Part shown: positions 1,549 to 63,660 of the stretch, one piece after another
How the letters are laid out: each line of letters opens with the position of its first letter
How positions within the stretch are numbered: position 1 is the stretch's first letter
Program-made: the position numbers and the translations under genes
Source: Octopus sinensis
Taxonomy: Eukaryota
DNA: 64,000 bases
NCBI RefSeq assembly: GCF_006345805.1
Contig: NC_043010.1
Coordinates: forward strand, 60,574,001 to 60,638,000
Direction: 5' to 3'
The notes under the pieces: model-generated
Seen by the model: the letters and a program-made list of their open reading frames with translations, nothing else
Database searches by the model: none
What the model was told of the DNA's origin: nothing

Positions 1549-1590
1549 AAATTTCTCCTGCTGAAATGTGATGAAGAATTCCAGACATGA
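1549..1590 (+). promoter_or_regulatory. Conserved splice acceptor plus 38-nt leader preceding the Pcdh ATG (present in all nine copies)
   Basis: Pyrimidine tract + TAG, then exactly 38 nt to the ATG in every copy (exon starts 1549, 9529, 15772, 22574, 31832, 40873, 48801, 54713, 63623). Similarity between copies drops just upstream of the AG. Confidence 0.8.
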
Positions 1591-4500
1591 CAGCATATAT
1601 TGGTCTACTGTGTCTTCTACATTTACTGATCACCCTTGTACTGTCCATAGATATTACATACCATGTCAAGGAAGAAGACAGACCTCACACCTATATTGGA
1701 GACATTGCTGTTGACTCCAACTTATCACACCCTCTCACACATCAACAACACACTCTCATTACATTTACACAACTACAAAGGACAGTCGAGAGTGGTTCTC
1801 ACTTATTTAATGTCACCAACTCAGGAAAACTATACACTACTCAAACACTGGACGCTGAGTCTCTGTGTACCTACAACAAGGAATGTTCCAGAATAGTTAA
1901 AGTAGCTGTGAGAAAAGGACAAACCTTTATGAAAATCCTTAAAATAAAAATATTGATACAGGACATCAATGACCATTCTCCAGAATTTCCACAGAATGAA
2001 GTTGAAATTGCATTTTCTGAGAGAGACAGTAAAGGAACTAGAATATCTCTTCTAAACGCAATTGATAAAGATATTTCAATAAGAAATTCCCAACTTAAAT
2101 ATATGATTGAAAAAAGCAAGAGTGAACCATTTTCTCTCTCTGTCACAAAACAGGATGGTATTTTCATACCTGAACTCATACTAGAAGAAACATTAGATAG
2201 GGAACTTCAAGACTCATATATTTTAGCAGTTCAAGCTAAAGATGGAGGAAACCCTCCCAAAACAACTACACTCAAGGTACACATATCTGTAACAGATGTC
2301 AATGATAACACACCTGTATTTTCCCAGAAAGTCTACAATATCTCTATAAATAATTCACATCAAAGACATTTACCAATTCTTACTTTAAAAGCCACAGATA
2401 AAGATTCTGGACTCAATGGAAAGATTTCTTATCATTTCAACCATAAAACATCTCAAAATATACAGAAATATTTTGTATTAAATAAGAAAACTGGAGATTT
2501 ATTTTTAGATGATAAATTTCAATTTACTAAAAAGCAATCTTATAAATTGTTTATTGAAGCAAGGGATGGAGGACAGTCACCCAAAAAATCTGTTACCAGA
2601 GTTCAGCTTCATGTAATTAATAATGAGAATAATGCTCCATTGATAAATATAGATTTTGTATCTCCTTTATCAGAGAGTTCAGCAGCTGTTTCGGAAGCAA
2701 GTAAAATTGGTAGTTTTATAGCTTATGTTATGGTCACTGACACTGATAGTGGACCTAATGGTGAGGTTATCTGTGATTTAAAACATGATAAATTTAAACT
2801 TGCCAAAATTGATTCTAAAGAATATAAAATGATTGTTAAGGGCCATCTTGACAGAGAAATAAGGGACCACTATAAAGTATCTATTGTGTGTCATGACATG
2901 GGGTCACCTCAACTAGAAAGTAAAAAATATTTCTCTGTCAAAGTAACTGATGTCAATGATGTAGAACCACATTTTACCAAAGAGACATTCCAATTCCTCA
3001 CTTATGAGAACCAGAAAGTTGACTTCCCTATTGGCTTCATCAATGCTACAGACCCTGATCTTGGAGATGGAGGCCAACTTACATATTCTATCATCAATGA
3101 TAACAACAATGATAACATTCCTTTCCAACTGACAAAATATGGATTCATTTCTACATCACAACCAATAGATCGAGAAATGAAAGACATCTATAAGTTCCAG
3201 GTTTTAGTGAAAGATAATGGAACACCTTCTCTCAATGACACTGCCAATATTGTTATTGAGATTCTAGATAAAAATGATAATGCTCCGTATTTTACGTTTC
3301 CTAATAATGACCCTACAATCTCGATGTCCACTACCATCCACACAGTAAGAAGGACATCACAATTCTGAGAGCATCTGACAAAGACACTGGAAACAATGCT
3401 TTCCTCACATATGGAATACTGAGATCCAATGATAAAAACCTGTTTACAGTGAACTCACACACTGGTGTGTTATCTTTCTCTCGCACAGTTTACCAAAATG
3501 ATGCAGGAACATATGAGCTGCAGTTTATAGTGAAAGACGGTGGTACTCCAGTTCAATCAGCAACAACTGCTATCATACTAACACTGTTTGTTAGTAATGA
3601 TACAACTCCAATGTTGACTGCTGTGCCATTCCAGTCTGGTCACGACCTGAATATGACTTGGGTAATTATCATTGTAGCAGCAGCTGTAATACTATCTGTG
3701 GCTATTGTAGTGTCCATAACACTGTGTGTTTTCAGATGTATTAATCACACAAATAACTCACCCACAACAGCAGAGAATCCCAACTTTCTCTCTCAGACTG
3801 AGATGAGACAATTACTGTATCAGACTAACAATCCTGTTGCAATAACGAGAAATGCAGAAGAGATATTTAACCGAAATCTTCAGACAATAAAATCTAAAAG
3901 TCAGTTTTTTCTGGAGATGGAACAGACACCAGATGAGTGGAAATTCTCAACAACACAAAGGAGACTTCCACCTGTGCCTCAGGTAAATATTATTTTAATT
4001 GATTTTTCGGAAATGATATATCACAGTTGTGGTTATAACAGTTATGTTCTAGTTTGTATATTTTTTCCTTTTCTTTCTAGAAATGTAAAAGCTTTCCTAT
4101 CAGTTTACACCTTTCAGAATTAGTAGAATTATTTCATTTAACAACTAAACTTGTTTCTCTAATTCTTTTATACAAATAAATTATTGAATATTAATAATTC
4201 TGATGGTCTGATTGTATTACCCTTCCTTGTGTCTTACCTGGGGCATTCTAGAATATAAATGCAAAAGTTTCTTCTTTTTAGCCTAATGATTCACCCTGCT
4301 TTGTTTTCTAATCCACAGAGATGTGATTCAATCCATAGTCAAGGACGTCGCACCAGTTCCATCATGTCTTACAACAGTGACACCTTAACATCCCAAAAGG
4401 ACAGAGAAGCTAGCAAGAGTAATGGCAAGACTAAACCATATGATGAGATACCTGCAGAACCAGGTAACTTTTATCAAAACATAACATATAAATGTAATTG

Positions 4501-4707: not shown

Positions 4708-5502
4708 TAGATGTTCCATGACTATTGTTAAATGATTCTCTCACACACCAAATCTTATACAATACTTTATATTCATATAAAAATATCAACTCTATGTTTC
4801 TTTCACACATTACACGCATAGAAGGCCTTACAGTGGTATCTATTATCATCCCTTTTTTACATCTCTGATACACTAAATATTACAAAACACCCAACTCTAC
4901 ATTACCATAGTTAATTATTATTAAACATTTATTTTACTGTCAGTTTTAGTATAGACATTTCACTAAAACTTAGATAAATTAACCTGATTCATCCTAGAAT
5001 GTTTAGTTTTTGTAGCTTTTAGTTTGATATCAATTCTATGTTTAATTAATATCATCTATTTTGTTTTATTGAGTGTTTTTAAAATTTTACTAATTAACAG
5101 TAGCTACAATTTAAGGGCGGCATACTGTTATCTATATTGAAAACATTAAAAGTTTTGTTAAATATTGAAATTTAAAGGGATTCATATTTTAGGAAGTATA
5201 AAGTAGAAAATGTCAGAAAAATAAGATTGTTCTTTTTTTTTACTTGGGAATACTTTTGTTTCTCCTAATTTACTTCGTTTACAGTTCCTCTAATCATGAA
5301 AACTTCTTAAATAATGAAATTTTTGTTGACTTACTCTAAAATTAATTTGTTTCTGATAGAAATCCTGATTATGTATTCTTATAGTGAAGTTAATATCAAG
5401 AAATATTATTATAAATCTTATATTTTAATACAAATCTCTTATTTCCTAACATTAGATATATAAATTTAGTGTTTTTATTAAATAGAAAAAATGAAGTTGC
5501 TT

Positions 5503-6190
5503 CTGTTTAACATGACTTCTCTTATTCAATGTGTTTGTGTGACACAGACCACATTGCAGTAATTTCCTATTGGATGAGAGAAATTTTCTCTATTTCTTTC
5601 AATATTGAAAGTGAGGCTGATAGCTTTTTTCTTTGTTCATCATACACACAATTGTGTGTGTGTGTGTGTGTGGAGGACATAGGGTTGTAACTAGCACACA
5701 CCAGCATCTGGCTAACATCTCACCTCCCACTACATACAGCAACTGTCACACTATTATATCAGCAGTTACACAGGAACAGCAGCAGCAGCTGCAGTAACAC
5801 AGGAACACTACTACAACAGCAGCAGTACCACTATAATACCACTACAGCAGTAGCAGCAGCAGTTAGAGTGGAACACTACAGCAGGATACACATCATCCAT
5901 CACACACAACTACAGTGAAGGATTAAACAATGCAGGTAAGTCTCTCTCTCTCTCCCTTTCTTCTCTTTATTATCTTTTCATATTCATTATAACATTTATA
6001 TTATTTGTGTTTCTTAATGAAAGACAGGGTAAGGATAATATCTAAAATGTCTGCCATGTTGTATATATACAGGGACTGGGACAGTGGAGGATCGAGAGAT
6101 CTAGCCATCACTTCCACCATTAACAACAACATCTGTAATAGACATTGTAATATAATTACTTCAAACTGCATTACGTCTTTTAACGTCAGA
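5503..6190 (+). promoter_or_regulatory. Conserved non-coding block 1 (candidate promoter + leader exon for copy B)
   Basis: ATTGG at 5569, palindrome CTTTCAATATTGAAAG 5596-5611, (GT)n, CAG-rich segment, donor CAG|GTAAGT at 5935/5936, second donor-like AGG|GTAAGG at 6028/6029. The block is near-identical in 8 units. Confidence 0.55.
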
Positions 6191-6442: not shown

Positions 6443-6513
<71 letters not shown>

Positions 6514-7018: not shown

Positions 7019-7069
<51 letters not shown>

Positions 7070-7098
7070 AATGTGTATATATATATATATGTATATAA

Positions 7099-7164
<66 letters not shown>

Positions 7165-7190
7165 GTAGGTTGCTATATGTATATATATAT
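7009..7190. repeat. Compound (TA)n/(TG)n microsatellite
   Basis: Read directly; includes recurring TGTATATAAATGTG units. Confidence 0.9.
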
Positions 7191-8520: not shown

Positions 8521-9566
8521 TGGGAAGAGGATTACCATTCACAAAATGAGGTGTGTAGAGATAAAGTTGGGAGAATTACTCAAGGGAGATAACTCTCGTT
8601 ACGTATTTCTAGATGGCCCTTTGCTGTCCAAAATGATTGCTAATTGTAGTATTTTATATATAAAAAGGTGAAAGAAAAACAAACAGTGCTTCAGTTCTGT
8701 GTTTGTGCATATGCATACATTTATATGTATGAATAGGACAGTGTGCAGCGAATGCGGTTTTCTATACTTTGTCACAATCTGCTTCCTTCCTTTTTAAGTG
8801 TTTCTGTTTATATGTGTGTGTGTATAAATGCACATGTCTATAATTCTATTTTCTATGTATCTTTCTAAGTAAACATACACAAACAGATATATATCAGTCA
8901 AATACATAAGAATATTTTACACAAACACAAACACAAACTTTCACATTCCTCTCTTTTACATGCAGATACATATACACACACAGTGTTGAAGCGCTGCTTG
9001 ATTTTTGTTTCACTGTTGACCTTTCACCATTCCACTTCCATCGGTGGATCACCCTTTCCTTTCTCATTCCTATGTTGTGACAGATAAATATACAAGAGTA
9101 TTATTATAGTAGAAGATACACAATGCTCTCTTTGCCTCTTCCTTTTTCTCTCTCATTGCTATTACTTTCTCTCACTCTCCCTCAGTCATGGCTATTACTT
9201 TCACTACTTCTCCTTCACTGAATTACTATTTTGGCTCCTCTCTCTTCACCATTCATGCGTACTGCATGATTTTGGACAAATATATATATATATATATATG
9301 TATACAAATATATATATATATATATATGTGTATACAAATATATACAAACAATATGCTCATTATTATATTTGGAGATTATCTTGTAGATTATCAGACATGA
9401 GAAGACTATTCAATTGGGACTAATGAAACATTTTTACAAATAAACATAGAAGTGTCACAGTCGTTTTTATAAATATAATTTGGTTTACATTCTACATAAG
9501 CTTTAAATATCTTTGCTGTCTTTTGTAGAAATTTCTCCTGCTAAAGTGTGATGAAGAATTCCAGAC

Positions 9567-12641: not shown

Positions 12642-13465
12642 TAGATGTTCCATGACTATTGTTAAATGATTCTCTCACACATCAAATCTTATACAATACT
12701 TTATATTCATATAAAAATATCAACTCTATGTCTCTTTCACACATCACATTTAAAGGGCCTTAAAGTAGAATCTATTATGACCCTTAATTTACAGTAAATA
12801 TTTCAAAAATCCTACTCTTCATTACCAAAGAACATTGTTATAGAATATTTATTTTCCTCTCAGTTTTCTTTTAGCCATTTCACTAAACATTGGTTAATTC
12901 ATTTGAGTCGTTCTAGAATGTTTAGTTATGGTAGCTTTTTTGATACCAATTCTCCCATTCATTATTATCATACTAAACTGTTTTCTAATATTTCCTTTTA
13001 TATTCAGTTTTTCTTAAATTTTATTAATTAACAGCTACCAGTAATTTAGCACTGAATATTTACCTATATTGCTAACATACTAAAACTACCAGCTCATATT
13101 TGAAGTTGTCTTTGTTATTGATTTTCAAATGTTTCATATTTTATGAAATGTTACAGAAAATATGAGAAAATCATGTGCATTTAAATATTTTTAACTTGGA
13201 AATATTTTTGTTTCTCCTAATTTACTTAGTTTACAGTTTATCTATTCATGTAAACTTCTTAACTAAAGATTTCTTTTGTGACTTAATCTAAAAACAATTT
13301 CTTTCTGATAGAAATTCTGAATACATATTCTTTATAGTGAAGTTAATAACTCATTAAATATCAAGAAATATTATAAATCTAATATTTTAATACAAATCTC
13401 TTATTTCCTAGCATTAGATATATAAATTTAGTGTTTTTATTACATATCAGCTTTGAAGTTCCTTT

Positions 13466-14110
13466 TGTTTAACATGATTTCTGTTACTTGATGTGTTTGT
13501 GTGACACAGACCACATTGCAGTAATTTCCTATTGGATGAGAGAGATTTCCTATATTTCTTTCAATATTGAAAGTGAGGCTGATAGCTTTTTTCTTTGTTC
13601 ATCATACACACAATTGTGTGTGTGTGTGTGAAGGACATAGAGTTGTAACTAGCACACACCAGCATCTGGCTAACATCTCACCTCCCACTACATACAGCAA
13701 CTGTCACACTATTATATCAGCAGTTACACAGGAACAGCAGCAGCAGCAGCGGTAACACAGGAACACTACTACAACAGCAGTAGTACCACTATAATACCAC
13801 TACAGCAGCAGCAGCAGCAGGAGTGGAACACTACAGCAGGATACACATCATCCATCACTCACAACTACAGTGAAGGATGAAACAATGCAGGTAAGTCTCC
13901 CTCTCTCTCTCTTTCTCTTTATTATCTTTTCATATTCATTATAACATTTATATTATTTGTGTTTCTAGTGAAAGACAGGGTAAGGATAATATCTAAAATG
14001 TCTGCCATGTTGTATATATACAGGGACTGGGACAGTGGAGGATCGAGAGATCTAGCCATCACTTCCACCATTAACAATAACTGCAGTAGTCATTGTAATA
14101 TAATTACTTC
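13466..14110 (+). promoter_or_regulatory. Conserved non-coding block 2
   Basis: ATTGG 13531, palindrome 13558-13573, donor CAG|GTAAGT 13890/13891. Confidence 0.55.
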
Positions 14111-15357: not shown

Positions 15358-15809
15358 ATTATTATTATTGTTATCGTTATTGTTATTATCATTATTATTG
15401 TTATTATTATTATTATTGCATATGGATTTATCATAGAGTTTCTGTTATCAGTCACAGTGTTGTAACAAGCAATTTCAATATATTTCAAGATACTTGTTGT
15501 CCCATTTGAGTATATCAGTAAATATAAATTTTTAACAAAGCCATTAATCAATTCAGAAATTCTCAACATTGTGATTACATCATCATAGTTTTTAAAAATT
15601 ACTCTAAATATACCTCTAGCTAAATATTGTGGATGGACATTTTTAAATTGTTCACTTCAGTCAAATGAAATGTTTTCAGATTTAATTAATAATACATACA
15701 CAATGGTTATAATTATAGTTTATTTTATTAAATTTTATTTACTCTTTAAGTATTGTTGTTGTGTTTTGTAGAAATTTCTCCTGCTAAAGTGTGATGAAGA
15801 ATTCCAAAC

Positions 15810-18825: not shown

Positions 18826-19610
18826 TAGATGTTCCATGACTATTGTTAAATGATTCTCTCTCACACCAAATCTCATACAATACTATATATTCATATAAAA
18901 ATATCAACTCTATGTTTCTTTCACACATCACACATAAAAGGCCTTACAGTGGCATCTACTATGACTCCCAATTTACATCTCTGATACATGAAATACAAGA
19001 AATGACTACATTACTTTAGTTATTTTATAAGATAGTTATTTTACTCTTAGTTTTGCTATAGAAGTTTCACTAAACATATATAAATTAATTAGGGTCATCC
19101 TAGAATTTTCAGTTATAGTATTTATTGGTTTGATATCACTTCTACCATTAATTAGTTTCATACTAACTTATACCATGGTTTTACATTTTTTTCCATTTTG
19201 TGTTTTGTTCACACCACTTTATCTTTTATATTCTGTGTATATTGAATTTTATTAATCGATTAATATCAGTATAGATGAATAACTGTTGGTGCCCACAAAA
19301 TGCAATAAAGTGCTGTCACCTATATTCATAACATACTGAAATGATCTACTCATTTAAAAATTGAAATTGAAATGTTTTATATTTTATGAAATATGACATA
19401 GAAAATATCATGTGAACTTCTTAAATAATGAAATCTTTGATGACTTCTTCTAAAATCATTTTGTTTCTAATAGGAATCCTGAATATGTATTCTTATAGTG
19501 AAGTTATAAATAACCCATCAACTATCAAGAAATATTATTATAAATCTTATAGTTTAATACAAATATATGTAATGTAGTGTTTTGTTGAAGAAAAAATGTG
19601 ATGTTCTTTC

Positions 19611-20280
19611 TGTTTAACATCATTTCTCTTGTTTGATGTGTTTGTGTAACACAGACAACATTGCAGTAATTTCCTATTGGATGAGAGAGATTTTCTATAT
19701 TTCTTTCAATATTGAAAGTGAGGCTGATAGCTTTTTTCTTTGTTCATCATACACACAATTGTGTGTGTGTGTGTGTGTGTGTGGAGGACATAGAGTTGTA
19801 ACTAGCACACACCAGCATCTGGCTAACATCTCACCTCCCACTACATACAGCAACTGTCACACTATTATATCAGCAGTTACACAGGAACAGCAGCAGCAGT
19901 AACACAGGAACACTACTACAACAGCAGCAGTACCACTATAATACCACTAGCAGTAGCAGCAGCAGTTGGAGTGGAACACTACAGCAGGATACACATCATC
20001 CATCACACACAACTACAGTGAAGGATTAAACAATGCAGTAAGTCTCCCCCTCTCTCTCTCTTCTTTCTTATATCTTTTCATATTCATTATAACATTTATA
20101 TTATTTGTGTTCTAATGAAAGACAGGGTAAGGATAATATCTAAAATGTCTGCCATGTTGTATATATACAGGGACTGGGACAGTGGGGATCGAGAGATCTA
20201 GCCATCACTTCCACCATTAACAACAACAACTGCAGTAGTCATTGTAATACAATTACTTTGAACTGGATTACGTCTTTGAA
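19611..20280 (+). promoter_or_regulatory. Conserved non-coding block 3
   Basis: ATTGG 19676. Donor reads ATGCAGTAAGT at ~20038, one G shorter than in other copies. Confidence 0.5.
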
Positions 20281-20883: not shown

Positions 20884-22611
20884 TAAAGATGTTGGTCAAT
20901 ATTATTTCGTGTAGATTTGTTATTTAAGATATTTAGTGTGATATATAAAGCAATTATATTGTCATGTGTTGTTAAAATATATTAATCCTGACAACAAAAG
21001 ATGAATATTGAGAATTATTCAGATATAATATCATTTCTCTACAAATTAACAAACATTTCATTATTACAGTTGTTAATACGCCATTATGTAAACTGTTGGT
21101 CAATATTATTGTTCGTGTAAATTTGGTTATTTCAGATATTTAGTGTGATCTATAACGCATTATATTGGTCATTGTTGTTCAAATATATTAATCTGATAAA
21201 GAACACAAGATGAATATTGAGAATGACTCAAAGATAATATACATCATTTCTATATCTCTCTACAAATTAACCAACATTTCATTATTACAGTTGTTAATTC
21301 TATATATAATATAACAGAAATACTTATATATATAAAATCTAAATGTTATATGTAAATAGGGATTAAATTACTTTAATTACAATTAATTTGATAAGAAAGA
21401 TATCTACATATTTCATGAAGATAATTATACATCTTTTTCCATCAAAAACATATAACTCCACCATTTTATAATTCCCATTTTTGTAAATTATTTCCACATA
21501 ATTTTATAATCTATTCTTTGTCAGTTATTTGTGAAATAAGTCAACAAGACATCTTCTATCCAGGTTATTAGGTTTCTTAGATACACTTATCCTACATTTC
21601 TGTGAAACAGGTATATTATTATCAAATGTCTTTCAACCCCTTTCATACCAACTTGCCTCTAATTGTGCCAGGTTTATGATGAACTATTAACTTCCTTCTT
21701 AAAGTGCTTTAAATTAAAGCTTTCCATTCAATTTCATCTTGATTTGTGTTCCAATCACCAGATTCATTTTGACAAAGTTATTTACTAAATTTTTTGCTGT
21801 ATTTTGAAATTGATCGAAACAAAAGCAATGTATTCCAACAGAAATACGGTAACAAAAGAGAGAAATTCCAACCAACAAGACACAATAAAGTACATTTAGT
21901 TATCATGTCCTTATCTTTCGCTCTGCAACCTAAACTTCATTAATTAAATATCTCGAGAGACTACTGTTCATTAATTTCACAATATATTTTACTTCTCTCT
22001 TTTGATTAGGACCTACCATCAGCTTAGATGGTAGGTCTAATTGTAGAATTAGACCTACCATCAGCTTAGAGTAGAATTGCTGTTGTTTTCATATTGTATA
22101 TATCATTAATCTCCAAAGACTAAAATCTTTCTCTGTGATGTAAATTTAAAGGGTTTTAATATTTCCTTGTCAGAGTCTGCATTATTCAAGCTGTCAACAT
22201 TCTGTCATCATTTCTGGTTTATTATATTCAGGATTACTTTATCAAGTATATTCATCTATTTGTAAGACTGTAGAATCAGATTTAAAGGTTGGGCTGCCTT
22301 TTACTACCACAGACAGAATGACCATATAAAAGTTCTTACATTGGCTCAGACCATCACTTTACATCACATATCAAAGTCTGGTTCTCAGCTAGATGGAGGC
22401 ATGGTATAACTGCAACAATAACGTTATGTTTGTAAACTATTAGTTTAAAGTTTTAAGTTTAGCTTCAGGGAATATAACAAAGTACAATGAATAACATCTA
22501 CACAATGACTGCTTTATTTTAGTTTATTTTATTGAATTTTATTTAGACTTTCAATGTCTGTTATGTTTTGTAGAAAACTCTCCTGCTAAAGTGTGATGAA
22601 GAATTCCAGAC

Positions 22612-26125: not shown

Positions 26126-26940
26126 TAGATGTTCCATGACTATTGTTAAATGATTCTCTCACACACCAAATCTTATACAATACTATATATTCATATAAAA
26201 ATATCAACTCTATGTCTCTTTTACACATCACATTTAAAGGGCCTTAAAGTAGAATCTATTATGACCCTTAATTTACAGTAAATATTTCAAAAATCCTACT
26301 CTTCATTACCAAAGAACATTGTTATAGAATATTTATTTTCCTCTTGTTTTCTTTTAGCCATTTCACTAAACATTGGTTAATTCATCTGAGTCGTTCTAGA
26401 ATGTTTAGTTATAGTAGCTTTTTGATACCAATTCTCCCATTCATTATTATCATACTAAATTATTTTCTGTTTTTCTTTTATATTCAGTTTTTCTAAAATT
26501 TTATTAACAGTTACTGCTAATTTAGATATAACAATTCACCTATATTGCCAACATACTAAAACTACCAGCTCACATTTGAAGTTTTCTTAGGTATTGATTT
26601 TCAAATGTTTCATATTTTATGAAATATTACAGAAAATATGAGAAAATCATGTGCATTTAAATATTTTTAACTTGGAAATATTTTTGTTTCTCCTAATTTA
26701 CTTAGTTTACAGTTTATCTATTCATGTAAACTTCTTAACTAAAGATTTCTTTTGTGACTTAATCTAAAAACAATTTCTTTCTGATAGAAATTCTGAATAC
26801 ATATTCTTTATAGTGAAGTTAATAACTCATTAAATATCAAAAGATATTATAAATCTAATATTTTAATACAAATTTCTTATTTCCTAGCATTAGATATATA
26901 AATGTAGTGTTTTTATTAAATAGAAAAAGTGATGTTGCCT

Positions 26941-27600
26941 CTGTTTAACATGAATTCTGTTGTTTGATGTGTTTGTGTGACACAGACAACATTGCAGTAA
27001 TTTCCTATTGGATGAGAGAGATTTTCTATATTTCTTTCAATATTGAAAGTGAGGCTGATAGCTTTTTTCTTTGTTCATCATACACACAATTGTGTGTGTG
27101 TGTGTGGAGGACATAGAGTTGTAACTAGCACACACCAGCATCTGGCTAACATCTCACCTCCCACTACATACAGCAACTGTCACACTATTATATCAGCAGT
27201 TACACAGGAACAGCAGCAGCCAGCTGCAGTAACACAGGAACACTACTACAACAGCAGCAGTATACCACTATAATACACACAGCAGCATAGCAGCAGCAGT
27301 TGGAGTGGAACACTACAGCAGGATACACATCATCCATCACACACAACTACAGTGAAGGATTAAACAATGCAGGTAAGTCTCTCTCTCTCTCTCTCTTTTC
27401 TCTTTATTATCTTTTCATATTCATTATAACATTTATATTGTTTGTGTTTCTAATGAAAGACAGGGTAAGGATAATATCTAAAATGTCTGCCATGTTGTAT
27501 ATATACAGGGACTGGGACAGTGGAGGATCGAGAGATCTAGCCATCACTTCCACCATTAACTACAATAACTGCAGTAGTCATTGTAATATAATTACTTCTT
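26941..27600 (+). promoter_or_regulatory. Conserved non-coding block 4
   Basis: ATTGG 27007, donor CAG|GTAAGT 27372/27373. Confidence 0.55.
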
Positions 27601-31655: not shown

Positions 31656-31869
31656 TAGCGAATATTCACTTAGTCTTTTCCAAGAGGGTAACCCTTGCTA
31701 AATATTCAGGATTAACATTTTAAGGGAGTGTATTCAGATCTAATTAATAATACTTACATGATGACTATTAAAATTATAATTATTTTATTGAATTTTGTTT
31801 AGCCTTTAAATATCATTGTTGTCTTTTATAGCAATTTCTCCTGTTGAAATGTGATGAAGAATTCCAGAC

Positions 31870-35030: not shown

Positions 35031-35792
35031 TAGATGTTCCATGACTATTGTTAAATGATTCTCTCACACACCAAATCTTATACAATACTTTATATTCATA
35101 TAAAAATATCAACTCTATGTTTCTTTCACACATCACACACATAGAGGGCCTTACATTGGTATCTATTATGACCCCTGATTTAAATCTCTAATGCATTAAA
35201 TATTACGACCACATTACCTTTTATTACATAGTTGATTATTATAAAATAGTTATTTTACTTGCAGTTTTTGACATTTCACTAAACATTGGCAAATTAATCT
35301 GAGTCATCCTAAAATGTTTAGTTCTGTTATGTTTTAGTTTGACACCAATTCTAACATGTACCTTCTGCTGTTTCAATTTTATTTACAATCTTTCCTGTAG
35401 CATTTTGTATCAATTCTAGAAGTACTTTTACTAATTACCAGATGGACAATTGTTTTAGAGGTAAATAGCTCACCTTTAAAAGTAAATATAAATAGCATAC
35501 TACAAACACCTAATCATATTTGAACTTTTGTTAAATTTTAAAATTGTGAAGTTTCATCTCTTACAAAGTGGCATATTGAAAATAAATTAGAATATTTCTA
35601 GAAAATAATTTTTGCATCCAAAATAATTTATTTGAAAATATTTTCATTTCCACAATTAAGACTAGTTTTATTTAAACTTAAAATTATCTAAGTAATATAA
35701 TTATATAGTTTGTATTTTTCCTACAATTTTTTTATTTCTTAACACTAAATATTTAAGTAGTAATATTATGATCTGTAAACTGTCAATCTGCT

Positions 35793-36490
35793 TCTGTGTA
35801 ACATGACTTCTTTTGTTTGATGTGTTTGTGTGACACAGACAACATTGCAGTAATTTCCTATTGGATGAGAGAGATTTTCTATATTTCTTTCAATATTGAA
35901 AGTGAGGCTGATAGCTTTTTTCTTTGTTCATCATACACACAATTGTGTGTGTGTGTGTGTGTGGAGGACATAGAGTTGTAACTAGCACACACCAGCATCT
36001 GGCTAACATCTCACCTCCCACTACATACAGCAACTGTCACACTATTATATCAGCAGTTACACAGGAACAGCAGCAGCACAGTAACACAGGAACACTACTA
36101 CAACACAGCAGCAGTACCACTATAATACCACTACAGCAGCAGCAGCAGCAGTTGGAGTGGAACACTACAGCAGGATACACACATCATCCATCACACACAA
36201 CTACAGTGAAGGATTAAACAATGCAGGTAAGTCTCTCTCTCTCTCCTTCTCTCTCTTTCTCTTTATTATCTTTTCATATTCATTATAACATTTATATTGA
36301 TTTGTGTTTCTAATGAAAGACAGGGTAAGGATAATATCTAAAATGTCTGCCATGTTGTATATATACAGGGACTGGGACAGTGGAGGATCGAGAGATCTAG
36401 CCATCACTTCCACCATTAACACAACAAGAACTGCAGTAGTCATTGCAATACAATTACTTTGAACTGGATTACGTCTTTTAATGTCAGAAT
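35793..36490 (+). promoter_or_regulatory. Conserved non-coding block 5
   Basis: ATTGG 35860, donor CAG|GTAAGT 36226/36227. Confidence 0.55.
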
Positions 36491-40408: not shown

Positions 40409-40910
40409 ATCAATCTTATCAAGTACCTTCAAATCCAAAAATACTTCCATACAGCATTTTCTTATTTTCAAAATTTTCACTTCATCAAGTCCATTAAAAT
40501 TGTCTACATTAGAAATTGCTTTTAAATTTTAGACACCCTAAAATGAGGGATGGTGTTTCTGATGGTTTCATCAATAATCTGGGTTCATCACAGATTTCCA
40601 ACTCACATTATATTTGAGACATTACCATGTTTCAGAATAATAACCAGAAGTTTTTCTTTCTCTCGTAGTGCTCACATGGTAATGCACATTCTCAGAGCAT
40701 ATGAGTTTCTTTTTGTATCACTTCAGTTCTTCATTTTTGTTTCAGGTGGTGAGATGGGTAACTTTTTCATTACTTTTCACTCTGTTGGAAATAACATTTA
40801 CACCATAAATATTATAATTTTCTTTTATTTAATTATTCCATAGTCTTTACATATGTTTGTTGTCTTTTGTAGCAATTTCTCCTGCTAAAGTGTGATGAAG
40901 AATCCCAGAC

Positions 40911-43900: not shown

Positions 43901-44015
43901 ATGTAATTTGTGTTTGTATATTTGATATTTTGCAGAATATACCAATGACAATCCAGTTGCAGCCACAATACTAAAGGGACAACAAATACAAGATACCTAT
44001 CTACAGCCAACATAG
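40911..44015 (+). CDS. Pcdh: Protocadherin copy F, intact, 873 aa predicted
   Basis: join(40911..43307,43627..43771,43936..44015). 799-codon first coding exon with canonical GT-AG introns. Confidence 0.93.
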
Positions 44016-44855
44016 TAGATGTTCCATGACTATTGTTAAATGAGTCTCTCACACATCAAATCTTATACAATACTTTATATTCATATAAAAATATCAACTC
44101 TATGTTTCTTTCACACATCACACATAAAGGGCTTTACATTGGCATCTGTTATGACCCCTAATTTACATTTCTGAAGCATTAAATACTAGAAACACCTTAT
44201 TTTTATATTACCATAGTACATTAGTATAAAATAATTATTTTACTTTCATTTTGGTATAGGCGTTTTACTAAACATAGATAAATTAATCTGGGTCATCCTA
44301 GAATGTTTAATTGTAGCATCTTTTAGTTTAACACCAATTCTAACATGTATCTTCTGCTGTTTTACCTTTATTTACAACTTTTATCTGCATTTCCTTTCTC
44401 TATCAGCTCTAGAAGTACTTTTACTAATTACCAGATGGATAATTGTTTTAGAGGTAAATGGCAGACCTCTAAAAGTAAAGATAAATACCAGCACCTAATC
44501 ATTTTTGAACTTTAGTTAAATTTTATAAATTGAAAAGTTTCATCTTTTACTAAGTCAGATAGTGAAGGTAGATTAGAATATTTCTGGAAAATTCATTTTG
44601 GCTTTCAAAATAATTCTTTGGAAATATTTTCATTTTTACAATTAGAATTAGTTTACTTTAAACTTTAATTAAAATAAACTTTAAAAGTGGTCAAATTTTG
44701 GTTGTCTTTACTAAAATTTACATCTCTCTTAAAAAGAAAAAAACGATTTACAGTTGTATGATAATAAGTTTTGAATTTTTCATGCAAATTTTTAGTTTCT
44801 CAACATGAAATGTGTAATATATTGTTATTATTACATATCAGTTATGGAGTTGCTT

Positions 44856-45550
44856 CTATTTAACATGGATTCTGTTACTTGATGTGTTTGTGTGACACAG
44901 ACCACATTGCAGTAATTTCCTATTGGATGAGAGAGATTTTCTATATTTCTTTCAATATTGAAAGTGAGGCTGATAGCTTTTTTCTTTGTTCATCATACAC
45001 ACAATTGTGTGTGTGTGTGTGTGTGGAGGACATAGAGTTGTAACTAGCACACACCAGCATCTGGCTAACATCTCACCTCCCACTACATACAGCAACTGTC
45101 ACACTATTATATCAGCAGTTACACAGGAACAGCAGCAGCAGCAGCAGTAACACAGGAACACTACTACAACAGCAGCAGTACCACTATAATACCACTACAG
45201 CAGCAGCAGCAGCAGTTGGAGTGGAACACTACAGCAGGATACACATCATCCATCACACACAACTACAGTGAAGGATTAAACAATGCAGGTAAGTCTCTCT
45301 CTCTCTCTCCTCTCTCTTTCTCTTTATTATCTTTTCATATTCATTATAACATTTATATTATTTGTGTTTCTAATGAAAGACAGGGTAAGGATAATATCTA
45401 AAATGTCTGCCATGTTGTATATATACAGGGACTGGGACAGTGGAGGATCGAGAGATCTAGCCATGACTTCCACCATTAACAACAGCAAGAACTGCAGTAG
45501 TCATTGTAATTCAATTACTTTGAACTGGATTATGTCTTTTAATGTCAGAA
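44856..45550 (+). promoter_or_regulatory. Conserved non-coding block 6
   Basis: ATTGG 44922, donor CAG|GTAAGT 45288/45289. Confidence 0.55.
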
Positions 45551-48006: not shown

Positions 48007-48838
48007 GATGGCAATATATATAAGTTGGTGTAGATTTGTTATTTAAGATATAATTTATTGAGATGTGAATTAAATTGGAAATTTATATTTGTGATGTTAA
48101 TGAATACACAAGCATTTTTTAATTCTGTGAATTAATGTGTATATTTCTAGTTATAATGTCAGTTTATTCCTAAAGGTTTAATTATACTAAATTTTAAATA
48201 TTTAGTTTCATTTAACACTTTCATTACCAACCTGGTTGAAACTGCCTCTGGCTCTTGTTTTCATAAGTTTTGAATTAAAATCTTCCACCAAACCTTAGAC
48301 ACAATTTATGTTCCTAACACTAGCTGAATGATAACTAAGTTATTTTACTAAATTCTTTGTTATATTTAAAGTAATTGAAAGAAATACAGAGCATCTCAAA
48401 ATAAATGCAGTAACGAATGGGTAAAACAATGTATTGCATCTGTTCCAACAAATATTTTGGTGAGTGTATAAATCTCATTACAACAAAAACTATTTGTTCA
48501 CTAATTGTCAAAGTCAAATAAACACAGAACCTACAACACATTGTTTCACACATAGTAATGTCTTTTATATAAGGAATTCTGAATGATAAATAATGAGACA
48601 TATTGACAATTCAGATCAGGCTGTTTTATTCTGTAGAGATAAGCCTACCCATTAATGACTGTCACGTCAGGAAGAGATGGTTATAAAAATGGAATGTCGC
48701 ATGTAACATAGAATATTTACATATGTATATGTATATAACATCAACCCATTATTGTTTCTATAAGAAATTTTACTTTCTCTATTCCTCTTTTCTTTTGTAG
48801 CAATTTCTCCTGCTAAAGTGTGATGAAGAATCCCAGAC

Positions 48839-51946: not shown

Positions 51947-52715
51947 TAGATGTTCCATGACTATTGTTAAATGATTCTCTCACACACCAAATCTTATACA
52001 ATACTTTATTTTCATATAAAATATCAACTCTATGTCTCTTTCACACATCACAAATAAAGGGCTTTACATTGGCATCTGTTATGACCCCTAAGTTACATTT
52101 CTGATGCATTCAATGCTAGAAATACCATACTTTATATTACCACAGTACATTAGTATAAAATTATTTTTTTTCCTTCATTTTGGTATAGGCATTTCACTAA
52201 ACATAGATAACTTCATCTGAGTCATCCTAGAATGTTTAATTGTAGCATCTTTTAGTTTAACACCAATTCTAACATGTAGCTTCTGCTGTTTTACCTTTAT
52301 TTACAACTTTTGTCTTTGCATTTTTTCCCTGTATCAACTCTAGAAGTACTTTTTCTAATTACCAGATTGAGAATTATTTTAGAGAAATAGCATACTACAA
52401 ACACCTAATCATATTTGAACTTTTGTTGAATTTTGAAATTGCAAAGTTTCATCTCTTACAAAGTCAGATATTGAAGATAAATTGATTTGGAAATATTTTC
52501 ATTTCCACACTTAAAATTAGTTTAATTTAAACTTTAATTAAAATGAACTTTAAAATTTATCAAGTTTTTGGTTGTCTTTACTAAAATTTACATCACTCTG
52601 CAGATATATTTAAAATTGTATAATAATAAGTTTTAAATTTCTCATGAAAATATTTAATCTCTGGACAGAAACTATGTAATATATTGTTATTATTACATAT
52701 CAGCTATTAAGTTCC

Positions 52716-53134
52716 TTCTGTTTAACATGACTTCTCTTGTTCGATGTGTTTGTGTGACACAGACAACATTGCAATAATTTCCTATTGGATGAGAGAGATT
52801 TTCTATATTTCTTTCAATATTGAAAGTGAGGCTGATAGCTTTTTTCTTTGTTCATCATACACACAATTGTGTGTGTGGAGGACATAGAGTTGTAACTAGC
52901 ACACACCAGCATCTGGCTAACATCTCACCTCCCACTACATACAGCAACTGTCACACTATTATATCAGCAGTTACACAGGAACAGCAGCAGCAGTAACACA
53001 GGAACACTACTACAACAGCAGCAGTACCACTATAATACCACTACAGCAGCAGCAGCAGCAGTTGGAGTGGAACACTACAGCAGGATACACATCATCCATC
53101 ACACACAACTACAGTGAAGGATTAAACAATGCAG

Positions 53135-53175
<41 letters not shown>

Positions 53176-53400
53176 TATTATCTTTTCATATTCATTATAA
53201 CATTTATATTATTTGTGTTTCTAATGAAAGACAGGGTAAGGATAATATCTAAAATGTCTGCCATGTTGTATATATACAGGGACTGGGACAGTGGGGATCG
53301 AGAGATCTAGCCATCACTTCCACCATTAACAACAACAACAACTGCAGTAGTCATTGTATTCAATTACTTTGAACTGGATTACGTCTTTTAATGTTAGAAT
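52716..53400 (+). promoter_or_regulatory. Conserved non-coding block 7
   Basis: ATTGG 52784, donor CAG|GTAAGT 53134/53135. Confidence 0.55.
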
Positions 53401-54645: not shown

Positions 54646-54750
54646 CCATTGACCTGTTTGCTATTATTTGCATAAGTTATTTTATTTTCAATACTGCTGT
54701 TGTCTTTTGTAGCAATTTCTCCTGCTCAAATGTGATGAAGAATTCCAGAC

Positions 54751-57720: not shown

Positions 57721-58485
57721 TAGATGTTCCATGACTATTGTTAAATGATTCTCTCACACACCAAATCTTATACAATACTATATATTCATATAAAAATATC
57801 AACTCTATGTTTCTTTCACACATAAGGGGCCTATATTGGCATCTCTTATAACCCCCAATTTACCCCTTGATACTTTAAATTTCAACAAAAACCCTAGATT
57901 ACCATAGTACATTATTATAAAATAGTAATTTTACTCTCAGTTTTCTTTTAAGGATTTCATTAAAAATAGATAACTTAATTGAATCATCTTAAAATTTTAT
58001 TCATACTATGTTTTCGTTGGAGACCAATTCTAACATATACCTTCTGCTATTTTACTTTTATTTACAACTTTTCTCTTAGCCTTTTCTTTTTTTCAACTCT
58101 AGAAGTATTTTTACCAATTACCATCCTTATAGATGGATAATTGTTGTAGTGGTAAATAGTTCACCTTTAAAAGTTTAAGATAGATAGCATACTACAAACA
58201 CATAGTTTTGTTAAATTTTAAAATTGAAAACATCAAATATTGGAGATAGATTAGAATATTTCTAAAAAATCCATTTTTGTTTTCAAAATGATTATTTGGA
58301 AAATTTTCATTTCCATGTTTAAAATTAGGTTAATTTATACTTGAATTGAAACAAACTTTGAAAGTAGTCAAAATATGGTTGTCTCTACTAAAATTTTCAT
58401 CTGTTTGAAAAAAAAAGATTTTTAGTTTCTTAGCATGAAATATGTAATATAGTAATATTATTACATATCAACTATGAAGTTCCTT

Positions 58486-59165
58486 TTGTTTAACATGATT
58501 TCTGTTACTTGATGTGTTTGTGTGACACAGACATCATTGCAGTAATTTCCTATTGGATGAGAGAGATTTTCTATATTTCTTTCAATATTGAAAGTGAGGC
58601 TGATAGCTTTTTTCTTTGTTCATCATACACACAATTGTGTGTGTGTGTGTGTGTGTGGAGGACATAGGGTTGTAACTAGCACACACCAGCATCTGGCTAA
58701 CATCTCACCTCCCACTACATACAGCAACTGTCACACTATTATATCAGCAGTTACACAGGAACAGCAGCAGCAGTAACACAGGAACACTACTACAACAGCA
58801 GCAGTACCACTATAATACCACTACAGCAGCAGCAGCAGCAGTTAGAGTGGAACACTACAGCAGGATACACATCATCCATCACACACAACTACAGTGAAGG
58901 ATTAAACAATGCAGGTAAGTCTCCCTCTCTCTCCCTTTCTTCTCTTTATTATCTTTTCATATTCATTATAACATTTATATTATTTGTGTTTCTAGTGAAA
59001 GACAGGGTAAGGATAATATCTAAAATGTCTGCCATGTTGTATATATACAGGGACTGGGACAGTGGAGGATCGAGAGATCTAGCCATCACTTCCACCATTA
59101 ACAACAACTGCAGTAGACATTGTAATATAATTACTTCAAACTGGATTATGTCTTTTAATGTTAGA
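58486..59165 (+). promoter_or_regulatory. Conserved non-coding block 8
   Basis: ATTGG 58552, donor CAG|GTAAGT 58914/58915. Confidence 0.55.
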
Positions 59166-59432
59166 ATCATACAAGACACATTATACAAGAAATATTAGAC
59201 TATATACATATGTATTGCTATGATATATTTTACATACAATAGTGGTCTAATTTAATCCAAACTACCTGCATATAAATTTATTTAACCGTTAGAAAACACT
59301 GATTGATAGCCAATAACATTGTGTGTTAATAACGTATGTCAGTATAGTTTCTATCTGTTTTGTCGTAATAATTCACTAATTAGCTTTAATGAACTGTAAC
59401 AGAACATTAATATCTATCTTTATGTGTATGTA

Positions 59433-63536: not shown

Positions 63537-63660
63537 CATATATATATATATATTAACATTGACCTGTTTGCTATTATTTCCATAAGTTATTTTATTTTCA
63601 ATACTGCTGTTGTCTTTTGTAGCAGTTTCTCCTGCTGAAATGTGATGAAGAATTCCAGAC

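What the first reader, a model, noticed from the sequence alone, without database searches (positions are those of the whole stretch)
5503..5941. Near-identical candidate promoter plus leader exon repeated once per gene: substrate for stochastic promoter choice?
A ~700-bp non-coding block is conserved about as strongly as the coding exons in all eight units. It holds an inverted CCAAT box, perfect 16-bp palindromes CTTTCAATATTGAAAG (5596-5611) and ACACACAATTGTGTGT (5644-5659), a (GT)n of about 4-11 units, an E-box CATCTG (5705), a CAG-rich segment and a consensus donor. The longest frame is broken by TAG in block 1 and TGA in block 2, so it is unlikely to be coding. Every Pcdh ATG is preceded by an acceptor that needs an upstream donor. 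Equivalent promoters differing mainly in repeat length would be the functional analogue of the vertebrate conserved sequence element used in isoform choice.
Basis: partly seen in the sequence, partly recalled or inferred. Interest (0 to 1): 0.8.

Follow-up and report, generated by a model that had tools for sequence, protein, structure and literature searches.

The report
Repeated octopus protocadherin promoter–leader module
Each gene in this Octopus sinensis protocadherin array is preceded by a nearly identical ~650-bp non-coding block that very probably supplies an untranslated first exon, and likely the promoter, for the next gene; whether it drives random isoform choice is untested.

Summary
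The window is Octopus sinensis chromosome CM016872.1, about 60.574-60.638 Mb. It holds nine head-to-tail protocadherin (Pcdh) genes and eight copies of a non-coding block, one per gap. Every listed motif sits at the stated coordinates.

The conserved core is about 650 bp (5500-6150).

The block is not part of the upstream coding sequence. Each Pcdh ends in two small exons about 1.2 kb before the donor.

The block ends in a perfect donor, CAG|GTAAGT, found on the + strand only here. An NCBI gene model splices 170 nt of the block across an 11-kb intron to the acceptor 38 nt before the next ATG. The block recurs in Argonauta hians, and its 3' end recurs in more distant Pcdh subfamilies.

Best reading: proximal promoter, non-coding exon 1 and a conserved intron-proximal element, homogenised by gene conversion. 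The leader exon is well supported. The promoter is inferred, because no TSS data exist and the NCBI model enters the block from the upstream gene.

Stochastic choice is untested. There is no CGCT or CTCF-like motif and only one CpG. The palindromes and E-box are not conserved in Argonauta.

The parts
5500..6150 (+). Block copy 1: homogenised core. Holds the putative promoter, the leader exon and a conserved post-donor element. Lies upstream of the Pcdh starting at 9567.
   Evidence: Sliding identity among the 8 copies rises from 63-80% to 87-100% at about 5500 and falls below 80% after about 6150. Alignment A1.
13462..14098 (+). Block copy 2, upstream of the Pcdh at 15810.
19607..20247 (+). 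Block copy 3, upstream of the Pcdh at 22612. A 1-bp deletion at the donor gives GCA|GTAAGT.
26938..27586 (+). Block copy 4, upstream of the Pcdh at 31870.
35791..36448 (+). Block copy 5, upstream of the Pcdh at 40911.
44853..45509 (+). Block copy 6, upstream of the Pcdh at 48839.
52715..53358 (+). Block copy 7, upstream of the Pcdh at 54751.
58483..59125 (+). Block copy 8, upstream of the Pcdh at 63661.
   Evidence: Identical to L007 823-1465.
5500..5765 (+). Copy 1, 5' half: inferred proximal promoter. Contains inverted CCAAT (5570-5574), palindrome 1 (5596-5611), the 22-nt cross-species footprint AAAGTGAGGCTGATAGCTTTTT (5608-5629, with a GATA-type TGATAG core), palindrome 2 plus (GT)9 (5644-5672) and CATCTG (5705-5710).
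   Evidence: Coordinates. Substitution divergence is 0.5-5.6% among copies. Footprint. Promoter function is inferred, not shown.
5756..5771 (+). ATATCAGCAGTTACAC: 16 nt invariant in all Octopus and Argonauta copies examined. It is either an initiator-like TSS motif (GCAGTT) or the internal acceptor CAG|TTACAC used by NCBI model P0128.
   Evidence: for invariance. for acceptor use in the model.
5766..5935 (+). Copy 1: minimal leader exon, 170 nt. It is CAG-rich and non-coding, and ends with the upstream start codon ATG CAG (5930-5935).
   Evidence: The equivalent 170 nt (L007 9958-10127) is an exon of NCBI model P0128. The frame is broken in 5 of 8 copies. The 26-nt footprint GAACACTACAGCAGGATACACATCAT lies at 5871-5896.
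5936..5941 (+). 5' splice donor GTAAGT. With the preceding CAG it forms the full consensus.
   Evidence: CAGGTAAGT occurs 7 times on the + strand, only in the block, against 0.63 expected. It is conserved as CAA|GTAAGT in Argonauta and AAG|GTAAGT in the O. vulgaris 70% subfamily.
5966..6150 (+). Conserved element just inside intron 1. Includes the 22-nt run ATTATCTTTTCATATTCATTAT (5969-5990), invariant in Octopus and Argonauta.
   Evidence: Divergence is 1.2% among copies. A 22-nt invariant run has expectation about 0.002. No excess RNA structure, z = -0.34.
1549..1586 (+). 38-nt leader between the acceptor TAG| and the ATG of Pcdh unit 1. Its block lies upstream of the window.
9529..9566 (+). 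38-nt leader after the acceptor, Pcdh unit 2. Inferred splice partner of the copy 1 donor. It completes the 15-codon upstream ORF (uORF), whose TGA overlaps the main ATG.
15772..15809 (+). 38-nt leader, unit 3.
22574..22611 (+). 38-nt leader, unit 4.
31832..31869 (+). 38-nt leader, unit 5.
40873..40910 (+). 38-nt leader, unit 6.
48801..48838 (+). 38-nt leader, unit 7.
54713..54750 (+). 38-nt leader, unit 8.
63623..63660 (+). 38-nt leader, unit 9. This gene is the one modelled as P0128.

Best explanation
The block is the 5' regulatory and leader module of the Pcdh gene that follows it.

Proposed parts, in copy 1 coordinates:
- The upstream ~265 bp (5500-5765) is the proximal promoter.
- Transcription starts somewhere between about 5620 and 5766. 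One candidate is the invariant GCAGTT motif at 5763-5768.
- The CAG-rich stretch up to 5935 is an untranslated exon 1.
- This exon is spliced from the consensus donor CAG|GTAAGT, across a 1.6-11 kb intron full of microsatellites, to the acceptor 38 nt before the Pcdh start codon.
- The ~200 bp after the donor is a promoter-proximal intronic control element.

The joined leader carries a 15-codon upstream ORF (uORF). It runs ATG CAG | 13 codons, and its TGA stop overlaps the main ATG (ATGA). It probably throttles translation.

The copies stay near-identical through gene conversion, the same process that homogenises the EC4-to-cytoplasmic coding part.

Status of each step:
- Shown: copy number, positions, sharp-edged homogenisation, non-coding nature, donor and acceptor conservation, and cross-species and cross-subfamily recurrence.
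- Shown by an annotation only: the donor-to-acceptor splice.
- Inferred: the TSS and promoter, uORF function, and any role in isoform choice.
For: 1. There are eight copies, all on the + strand, one per inter-gene space.

2. The upstream gene is already complete before the block. Big exon donor at 43307, small exons at 43627-43771 and 43936-44015, then TAG. This gives an 873-aa protein that matches NCBI models of 873-874 aa over 100% of its length. The stop lies 1.19-1.27 kb before the block's donor.

3. The core has sharp edges. Substitution divergence is 0.5-5.6% across its sub-blocks (11.8% in the short CT repeat after the donor) against 24-30% in the flanks. Fourfold sites show 24% in EC1-3 and 2.5% in EC4-cytoplasmic. 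So about 24% is the unhomogenised level, and the block is a conversion tract.

4. The block is non-coding, matches no Rfam family and has no excess RNA structure in the exon or the post-donor part.

5. The perfect donor occurs on the + strand only in the block. An acceptor lies exactly 38 nt before all nine ATGs.

6. NCBI model P0128 is the window's ninth gene. L007 1-6340 equals window 57661-64000 at 100% identity. The model contains the 170-nt block exon (L007 9958-10127) and then an 11.2-kb intron to the acceptor at L007 21287. It stops at the TGA in the next gene's leader. An 11-kb intron that adds only 7 codons is unlikely without read support; this last point is inference.

7. Argonauta hians has one block per inter-gene space, with AACAATGCAA|GTAAGT. 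Between the two species only the coding exons, the block and the 38-nt leader align. Four identical runs of 15 nt or more are seen against 0.46 expected, P = 0.0014.

8. The 3' ~100 nt of the exon plus the donor recur once per inter-gene space in an O. vulgaris subfamily with 70% protein identity (L003 at 6612, 17155 and 21599). A weaker match (E = 0.0014) occurs in a 64% subfamily, at L004 8188-8265, 1.74 kb before that gene's ATG. No Pcdh coding sequence lies in the 10 kb upstream of that ATG. This ties the exon to the downstream gene.

9. The uORF length, frame and ATGA overlap hold in all 12 Octopus leaders examined and in all 3 Argonauta units (two, the third read by eye). Unique variants are 6 synonymous to 4 non-synonymous in the uORF frame, against 2 to 8 in the other two frames.

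10. The 265 bp upstream of the minimal exon are as uniform as the exon itself. They carry a CCAAT box (8 of 8 copies; 2 of 3 in Argonauta) and a 22-nt cross-species footprint.
Against: - No transcript 5' end could be obtained. Searches for transcript-derived ORFs found nothing for this subfamily.
- The only transcript-like evidence, model P0128, enters the block through an internal acceptor (CAG|TTACAC) from a donor inside the upstream gene's stop codon. It therefore shows the block as an internal exon, not a first exon.
- Octopus-Argonauta substitution divergence of the block is 26-33%. That is not lower than fourfold-site divergence in the homogenised coding parts, 22%. Most of the block is therefore not under strong constraint. 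Its alignability owes much to concerted evolution, and only short footprints stand out.
- The palindromes and E-box are not conserved in Argonauta.
- The 5' half is not recognisable in the 70% and 64% subfamilies.
- There is no TATA about 30 bp before the candidate initiator, and the CCAAT box is about 190 bp upstream of it (sequence).
- The block sits at a nearly fixed distance from the upstream stop (1188-1273 bp) but 1.6-11.2 kb from the downstream ATG.
Confidence: 0.6

Rival explanations
1. The block is an internal 'bridging' exon of read-through transcripts. Transcription starts far upstream, or at the previous gene, and runs through the poly(A) site. Splicing goes from a donor inside the previous gene's stop codon into the block and on to the next Pcdh exon. 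In this reading the block holds no promoter. Its conserved 5' half would be intronic splicing control.
For: - Model P0128 has exactly this exon chain.
- Other annotation models fuse neighbouring genes: P0127 at 1794 aa, P0146 at 3146 aa, and a 3333-aa product at L007 21325.
- The acceptor motif ATATCAGCAG|TTACAC is invariant in Octopus and Argonauta.
- The block keeps a near-fixed distance from the upstream stop.
Against: - The frame through the block is broken in 5 of 8 copies, so it adds no conserved protein tail.
- A chained mRNA would leave the downstream Pcdh ORFs untranslatable.
- The fused models use assorted ad hoc junctions. This is typical of annotation chaining in near-identical tandem genes.
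- The CAG| acceptor is absent from the 70% subfamily copies.
- The leader-like exon in L004 has no Pcdh coding sequence in the 10 kb upstream of its gene's ATG.
- 265 bp at 94-100% identity upstream of an acceptor is a lot for a splicing element.
Confidence: 0.2
2. The block is a separate regulatory or non-coding unit rather than the sense promoter. It could be an enhancer or insulator, an antisense promoter, or a non-coding RNA gene. The donor and acceptor pairing would then be incidental.
For: - Conservation extends about 200 bp beyond the donor, with a 22-nt invariant run.
- The conserved footprints are scattered and resemble clustered factor binding sites.
- Vertebrate Pcdh alpha exons carry antisense promoters (own knowledge; Canzio 2019, listed in PMC10658181).
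Against: - No Rfam match and no excess RNA structure outside the palindromes.
- The perfect donor, the upstream ATG and the uORF frame are conserved across species and subfamilies.
- An annotation uses the donor.
Confidence: 0.1
3. The block has no function of its own. It is a by-product of gene conversion, perhaps started at the (GT)n tract and palindromes, that happens to homogenise this stretch.
For: - Between-species divergence of the block (26-33%) is about the synonymous level.
- (GT)n tracts are known recombination-prone sequences (own knowledge).
- Copies next to frameshifted genes are as uniform as the others.
Against: - The same stretch is homogenised, with similar limits, in Argonauta.
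- Footprints are significantly longer than chance.
- The consensus donor and the acceptor spacing are conserved in subfamilies where the rest has diverged.
- The Pcdh big exon needs an upstream exon, because its ATG follows an acceptor.
Confidence: 0.04

Closest known systems
Vertebrate clustered protocadherin variable-exon promoters with the conserved sequence element (CSE, a CTCF site)
   Same: One promoter-type module per isoform unit in a head-to-tail Pcdh array. The module is a repeated conserved non-coding element. Coding parts are homogenised by gene conversion while the EC1-3 region stays diverse. The mosaic here mirrors that pattern.
   Different: - The vertebrate CSE is about 20 bp with a CGCT box, at a fixed short distance upstream of the variable exon's ATG, and binds CTCF (PMC7811963).
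- Here there is no CGCT, no CTCF-like motif within 2 mismatches and one CpG in 654 bp.
- The octopus module is about 650 bp and includes a separate untranslated exon and a 1.6-11 kb intron.
- Each octopus unit is a whole gene with its own 3' exons. There are no shared constant exons.
Chelicerate shortened Dscam arrays expressed by alternative promoter choice
   Same: Tandem duplicated recognition-receptor units, each thought to use its own promoter (cited in PMC6339937).
   Different: A different gene family, with 5' variable cassettes spliced to shared exons. No sequence relationship was tested.
Concerted evolution (segmental gene conversion) in tandem gene arrays, as described for vertebrate Pcdh clusters and suggested for cephalopod Pcdh coding sequences
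   Same: Sharp-edged tracts with about 1-3% divergence, even at fourfold sites, lie next to about 24% divergent stretches. Copies within a species are more alike than copies between species. Gene conversion in cephalopod Pcdh genes is suggested in PMC9068888.
   Different: Here one tract covers a non-coding promoter and leader region. I found no description of that for cephalopods.
Upstream ORFs whose stop overlaps the main start codon (ATGA, termination-reinitiation type)
   Same: A 15-codon uORF ends in a TGA that overlaps the Pcdh ATG. Length and frame are conserved in two octopod genera.
   Different: The uORF is split by the intron, so it exists only after splicing. Translation and any regulatory effect are untested. 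The more distant subfamily copy in L004 lacks this upstream ATG.

Membership tests
Vertebrate-type Pcdh promoter CSE / CTCF site | Conserved ~20-bp element with a CGCT box | tested here: not met
   The only CpG in the 654-bp core is in ATCGAG. There is no CGCT.
Vertebrate-type Pcdh promoter CSE / CTCF site | Match to the CTCF core consensus (CCASYAGRKGGCR) | tested here: not met
   No match within 2 mismatches in any block. The whole window has 2 matches against 6.5 expected. The nearest stretch, CCAGCATCTGGCT, has 3 mismatches.
Vertebrate-type Pcdh promoter CSE / CTCF site | Fixed short distance upstream of the variable exon's ATG, with no intervening intron | tested here: not met
   The donor-to-ATG distance is 1.6-11.2 kb and varies between units.
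Vertebrate-type Pcdh promoter CSE / CTCF site | One element per isoform unit, in the same orientation | tested here: met
   Eight blocks for nine genes, all on the + strand.
Vertebrate-type Pcdh promoter CSE / CTCF site | CTCF/cohesin binding and looping to a distal enhancer | not testable with these tools
   Needs ChIP and Hi-C in octopus neurons.
RNA polymerase II promoter plus non-coding first exon | Transcription start site inside the element | not testable with these tools
   No CAGE, RACE or long-read data were reachable. Transcript-ORF searches were empty.
RNA polymerase II promoter plus non-coding first exon | Exon ends in a functional donor that is spliced to the acceptor of the coding exon | tested here: met
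   The consensus donor is unique to the block. The acceptor lies 38 nt before all ATGs. The junction is used in NCBI model P0128. Read support for that model could not be inspected.
RNA polymerase II promoter plus non-coding first exon | Core or proximal promoter motifs at canonical spacing (TATA at -30, Inr, CCAAT at -60 to -100) | tested here: inconclusive
   A CCAAT box is present in 8 of 8 copies and an Inr-like GCAGTT is invariant. They lie about 190 bp apart and there is no TATA at -30.
RNA polymerase II promoter plus non-coding first exon | The element goes with the downstream gene, not the upstream one | tested here: inconclusive
   For: the L004 leader-like exon has no Pcdh coding sequence in the 10 kb upstream of its gene's ATG, and the uORF frame is conserved. 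Against: the block keeps a fixed distance to the upstream stop, and P0128 links it to the upstream gene. At the array end in L001 the block is truncated, which is uninformative.
Protein-coding 3' exon of the upstream Pcdh | Open, conserved reading frame across copies | tested here: not met
   There are stops or frameshifts in 5 of 8 copies and indels of 1, 2 and 4 bp. The CAG repeats are replaced by CTA repeats in Argonauta.
Known structured non-coding RNA | Rfam covariance-model match or excess folding energy | tested here: not met
   The best Rfam hits score 17-18 bits against gathering thresholds of 65-100. Fold z-scores are -1.2, -0.7 and -0.3 outside the palindromes.
Gene-conversion (concerted evolution) tract | Paralogues much more alike than the neutral level, with sharp tract edges, and within-species identity above between-species identity | tested here: met
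   Divergence is 0.5-5.6% inside the core sub-blocks against 24-30% outside. Fourfold sites show 2.5% against 24%. Between species the block differs by 26-33%. The same pattern occurs in Argonauta.

The most novel reading that the evidence does not exclude
Gene conversion keeps the promoters and leaders of the array members sequence-equivalent. The cell therefore cannot tell the genes apart by their factor binding sites. Which Pcdh is expressed would then be set by a stochastic or position- and chromatin-based choice. That choice would work without CTCF-type sites or CpG methylation, because the block has one CpG and no CTCF-like motif. A conserved, splice-dependent uORF overlapping the start codon would add a second, translational gate. 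This would be an independently evolved counterpart of vertebrate Pcdh promoter choice.
Probability: 0.15. Interest if true: 0.8.

Novelty: new variant of a known kind. Interest (0 to 1): 0.5.

Why it matters
How cephalopods regulate their hundreds of protocadherin genes is an open question. Reviews call the clusters 'still-enigmatic' and expect vertebrate-like stochastic processes, but without data (PMC10658181). I found no description of their promoters.

This analysis gives a concrete, testable gene architecture for one array:
- a homogenised module of about 650 bp with defined footprints
- a leader exon
- a long first intron
- a conserved uORF

It shows that concerted evolution reaches the non-coding 5' module as well as the coding sequence. 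It points to exact sequences for 5' end mapping, ATAC-seq, reporter tests and single-cell long-read assays.

It also flags that current annotations fuse neighbouring genes through this exon. That affects expression counts for the family.

Tried and rejected
- Transcript evidence. A search with the first 134 aa of the Pcdh found only five proteins. The two Logan contigs among them (L005, L006) belong to other subfamilies or species and share no leader with the block.
- A word-index search with the block-encoded peptide found nothing. The full HMMER scan gave one low-complexity hit.
- Known RNA families: none found.
- RNA structure: only the palindromes fold better than shuffles. The exon and post-donor part do not.
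- CTCF-like motif: none found.
- I asked whether a block's mutations track the intactness of its upstream or downstream gene. There was no pattern.
- Array-end test. In L001 the last gene is followed by a truncated block fragment fused to a Pcdh pseudogene piece, so it cannot show which gene owns the block.
- Uniform purifying selection on the whole block is rejected. Between-species divergence is at the synonymous level. Only short footprints are significant.
- The block as a coding C-terminal extension is rejected.
- The block as a transposable element was considered and set aside. It occurs once per unit, in fixed order and orientation, in two genera.
- The literature searches found no prior description.
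Full report
**What the window is.**
The large + strand ORFs are cadherin-repeat proteins (Pfam Cadherin, E about 1e-75). A spliced 873-aa product matches Octopus sinensis 'protocadherin beta-15-like' models at 94% identity over its full length.

Locus L007 is CM016872.1:60,631,661-60,658,969 from assembly GCA_006345805.1. Its first 6340 bases are 100% identical to window 57661-64000. The window is therefore O. sinensis chromosome CM016872.1, about 60,574,001-60,638,000.

It holds nine head-to-tail Pcdh genes. Their ATGs are at 1587, 9567, 15810, 22612, 31870, 40911, 48839, 54751 and 63661.

**Check of the observation.**
The block is present eight times, always on the + strand, once between each pair of consecutive genes. 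All named motifs are at the stated coordinates and occur in all eight copies. The (GT)n tract has 4-11 units.

Copies also differ by 1-, 2- and 4-bp indels. The block is therefore non-coding.

A pyrimidine tract plus TAG| acceptor lies exactly 38 nt before each of the nine ATGs. The full consensus donor CAGGTAAGT occurs on the + strand only in the block, seven times against 0.63 expected. The eighth copy has a 1-bp deletion that still leaves GCA|GTAAGT.

The two 16-bp palindromes account for 16 of the 19 non-trivial perfect palindromes in the window.

The block has sharp edges at about 5500 and 6150.

**Anatomy of a repeat unit.**
A conservation profile over unit 6 and direct reading give this order:
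- acceptor
- 38-nt leader
- big exon, 40911-43307
- small exon, 43627-43771
- small exon ending in TAG, 43936-44015
- about 0.85 kb of poorly conserved spacer
- the block, 44853-45509
- a variable stretch of 1.6-11 kb, rich in microsatellites, up to the next acceptor

So the other conserved patch downstream of each big exon is the pair of C-terminal coding exons of that gene. The gene is complete before the block begins.

**Why the copies are so alike.**
Fourfold-degenerate sites differ by 24% in the EC1-3 part of the big exon. They differ by only 2.5% in the EC4-to-cytoplasmic part and 4.9% in the first 300 nt.

The alignable flanks of the block differ by 24-30%. The core sub-blocks differ by 0.5-5.6%, apart from 11.8% in the short CT repeat after the donor.

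Uniformity at synonymous sites cannot come from protein-level selection. These are gene-conversion tracts, and the block is one of them. Argonauta shows the same mosaic, with weaker homogenisation of the block (82-96%), peaking around the donor.

**Is the block functional or only homogenised?**
An nhmmer profile of the core finds one copy per inter-gene space in Argonauta hians, at 250-294 bits. Between an Octopus unit and the Argonauta locus, only the coding exons, the block and the short leader can be aligned.

There is an important caveat. Block divergence between the two genera is 26-33%. That is not lower than fourfold-site divergence in the homogenised coding parts, 22%. Most of the block therefore evolves at roughly the synonymous rate. 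Its alignability owes much to concerted evolution in both lineages.

Constraint shows up instead as footprints. Comparing the two species' consensus sequences gives these identical runs:
- 26 nt, GAACACTACAGCAGGATACACATCAT, 5871-5896
- 22 nt, AAAGTGAGGCTGATAGCTTTTT, 5608-5629
- 22 nt, ATTATCTTTTCATATTCATTAT, 5969-5990
- 16 nt, ATATCAGCAGTTACAC, 5756-5771
- 14 nt across the donor

Four runs of 15 nt or more are seen where 0.46 are expected, P = 0.0014.

Palindrome 1 reads CTCTCAATACTCAAAG in Argonauta, palindrome 2 is broken, and CATCTG survives in one of three copies.

**Evidence that the 3' part is an exon spliced to the next gene.**
First, NCBI model P0128 (938 aa) is the window's ninth gene. 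After ...YLQPT it leaves the last coding exon at a TA|GT inside the stop codon. It enters the following block at CAG|TTACAC, reads 170 nt to AATGCAG|GTAAGT, then jumps 11.2 kb to the acceptor before the next gene's ATG. It stops at the TGA in that leader. I could not inspect the read support. An 11-kb intron that adds seven codons is unlikely to be a purely ab initio choice; this is inference.

Second, the donor with the preceding ATG is conserved as AACAATGCAA|GTAAGT in Argonauta. It appears as GATTAAACAATGAAG|GTAAGT, once per inter-gene space, in an O. vulgaris subfamily with only 70% protein identity. In a 64% subfamily, a weaker leader-like match (E = 0.0014) with CAGCAGTTACAAAGAACA...CAA|GTAAGT lies 1.74 kb before the ATG.

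Third, joining donor and acceptor creates a 15-codon upstream ORF (uORF), MQ[QK]FLLLKCDEE[FS]QT. Its TGA overlaps the main ATG. Its length, frame and overlap hold in all 12 Octopus leaders examined and in all three Argonauta units (two computed, the third read by eye from the sequence). Its unique variants are 6 synonymous to 4 non-synonymous, against 2 to 8 in the other two frames. The numbers are small, so this is suggestive only.

**Promoter or internal exon?**
This is the weak point. These observations favour a promoter:
- The 265 bp upstream of the minimal exon are as uniform as the exon. They carry a CCAAT box and a 22-nt footprint.
- The conserved zone has the shape of a promoter region, with exon 1 in the middle and a conserved intron-proximal element.
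- The frame through the block is not conserved, so it is not a real C-terminal extension.
- A chained multi-gene mRNA could not express the downstream ORFs.
- The fused annotation models use varied ad hoc junctions.
- The L004 leader-like exon has no Pcdh coding sequence in the 10 kb upstream of its gene's ATG.

These observations count against a promoter:
- There are no 5' end data.
- P0128 shows the block as an internal exon.
- The internal acceptor motif is invariant across genera.
- The block sits at a fixed distance from the upstream stop.
- The promoter motifs are not at canonical spacing.

I put 'leader exon of the downstream gene' at about 0.85. I put the full statement, 'promoter plus first exon', at about 0.6.

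**Comparison with what is known.**
Functionally the module resembles the per-exon promoters of vertebrate clustered Pcdh genes. It is not a member of that family of elements. There is no CGCT box, no CTCF-like motif within 2 mismatches and one CpG in 654 bp. A separate untranslated exon and a long intron replace the short fixed distance to the ATG (PMC7811963).

Cephalopod Pcdh genes are known to be whole-gene duplicates without shared constant exons, with gene conversion suggested for the coding sequence (PMC9068888). I found no description of their promoters, leader exons or uORFs. A review lists their regulation as open (PMC10658181).

**Verdict.**
The feature is real, repeated and non-coding. 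It is homogenised, and it is conserved in footprints across octopod genera.

It is best read as the 5' module of each Pcdh gene: likely promoter, untranslated exon 1 and a proximal intronic element. Gene conversion keeps the copies uniform.

Stochastic promoter choice remains a hypothesis that the near-identity of the copies makes worth testing.

Noticed in passing
window 40911-43307 (and the other big exons): The big Pcdh exon is a conversion mosaic. Fourfold-site divergence is 4.9% in nt 1-300, 24% in nt 301-1100 (EC1-3) and 2.5% in nt 1101-2397 (EC4 to cytoplasmic). The same mosaic occurs in Argonauta. It parallels the vertebrate pattern of a diverse recognition region with homogenised membrane-proximal parts.
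   Followed up: partly
window 1587-3982, 15810-18125, 22612-25006, 31870-34262, 54751-57147: Five of the eight complete big exons (units 1, 3, 4, 5, 8) carry 1-13 small indels and early stops relative to the intact units 2, 6 and 7. Unit 3 also lacks 78 bp. They are either pseudogenes or long-read assembly errors. Their neighbouring blocks are no less uniform.
   Followed up: partly
window 5930-5935 + 9529-9570 (and equivalents): A splice-dependent 15-codon uORF, MQ[QK]FLLLKCDEE[FS]QT, has a TGA that overlaps the main ATG (ATGA). It is conserved in length and frame in Argonauta. Unique variants are 6 synonymous to 4 non-synonymous, against 2 to 8 in the other frames.
   Followed up: partly
window 9551-9553 and equivalents (GTGATGAAG within the 38-nt leader): A second upstream ATG in the leader is out of frame and overlaps the main ORF. 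Protein P0004 from the cluster begins in this frame (MKNSRHD...) and then shifts into the Pcdh frame.
   Followed up: no
L007 6001-21309 and 21325 onward; proteins P0127, P0137, P0142, P0146: Public annotations of O. sinensis and O. vulgaris fuse neighbouring Pcdh genes into products of 1067-3333 aa, or truncate them to 759-760 aa. The junctions are assorted, and several use the TA|GT inside the stop codon. This points either to read-through transcription or to chaining artefacts in near-identical tandem genes. Expression counts for this family may be affected.
   Followed up: partly
window 43772-43935 and equivalents: The 164-bp intron between the two small C-terminal exons is as uniform among copies (97-99%) as the exons themselves. 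The conversion tract therefore spans 43600-44100 as a whole.
   Followed up: no
L001 13420-13700: At the end of the array the last gene is followed by a degenerate, truncated piece of the block (...GATAGCTTTTTTCTTTGTTCATCATACACACAATT). It is joined directly to a fragment of the 3' end of another Pcdh big exon. This marks an old rearrangement breakpoint at the (AC)n/(GT)n palindrome.
   Followed up: no
window 5757-5812 and 5858-5896: The leader exon contains internal repeats of a motif, CAGTTACACAGGAACA / CAGTAACACAGGAACAC / CAGTTAGAGTGGAACAC. More distant subfamilies have a single copy. The exon seems to have grown by internal duplication and CAG expansion.
   Followed up: no
L006 1-323 (Logan SRR8281666 contig): A likely Pcdh transcript contig from another cephalopod, at 52% protein identity, has a 323-nt 5' UTR that begins with a GCAGCAGCAGTGGCAGTAGAAGAAGCA stretch. 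This resembles the block's CAG-rich leader in composition. The similarity is not significant (nhmmer E = 0.11).
   Followed up: no
window 6444-6512, 7026-7190, 9280-9344 and similar: Intron 1 of each unit is filled with long (AT)n, (TTA)n and related microsatellites, and differs in length from 1.6 to 11 kb between units. The spacer between the stop codon and the block stays at about 0.6-0.9 kb.
   Followed up: no
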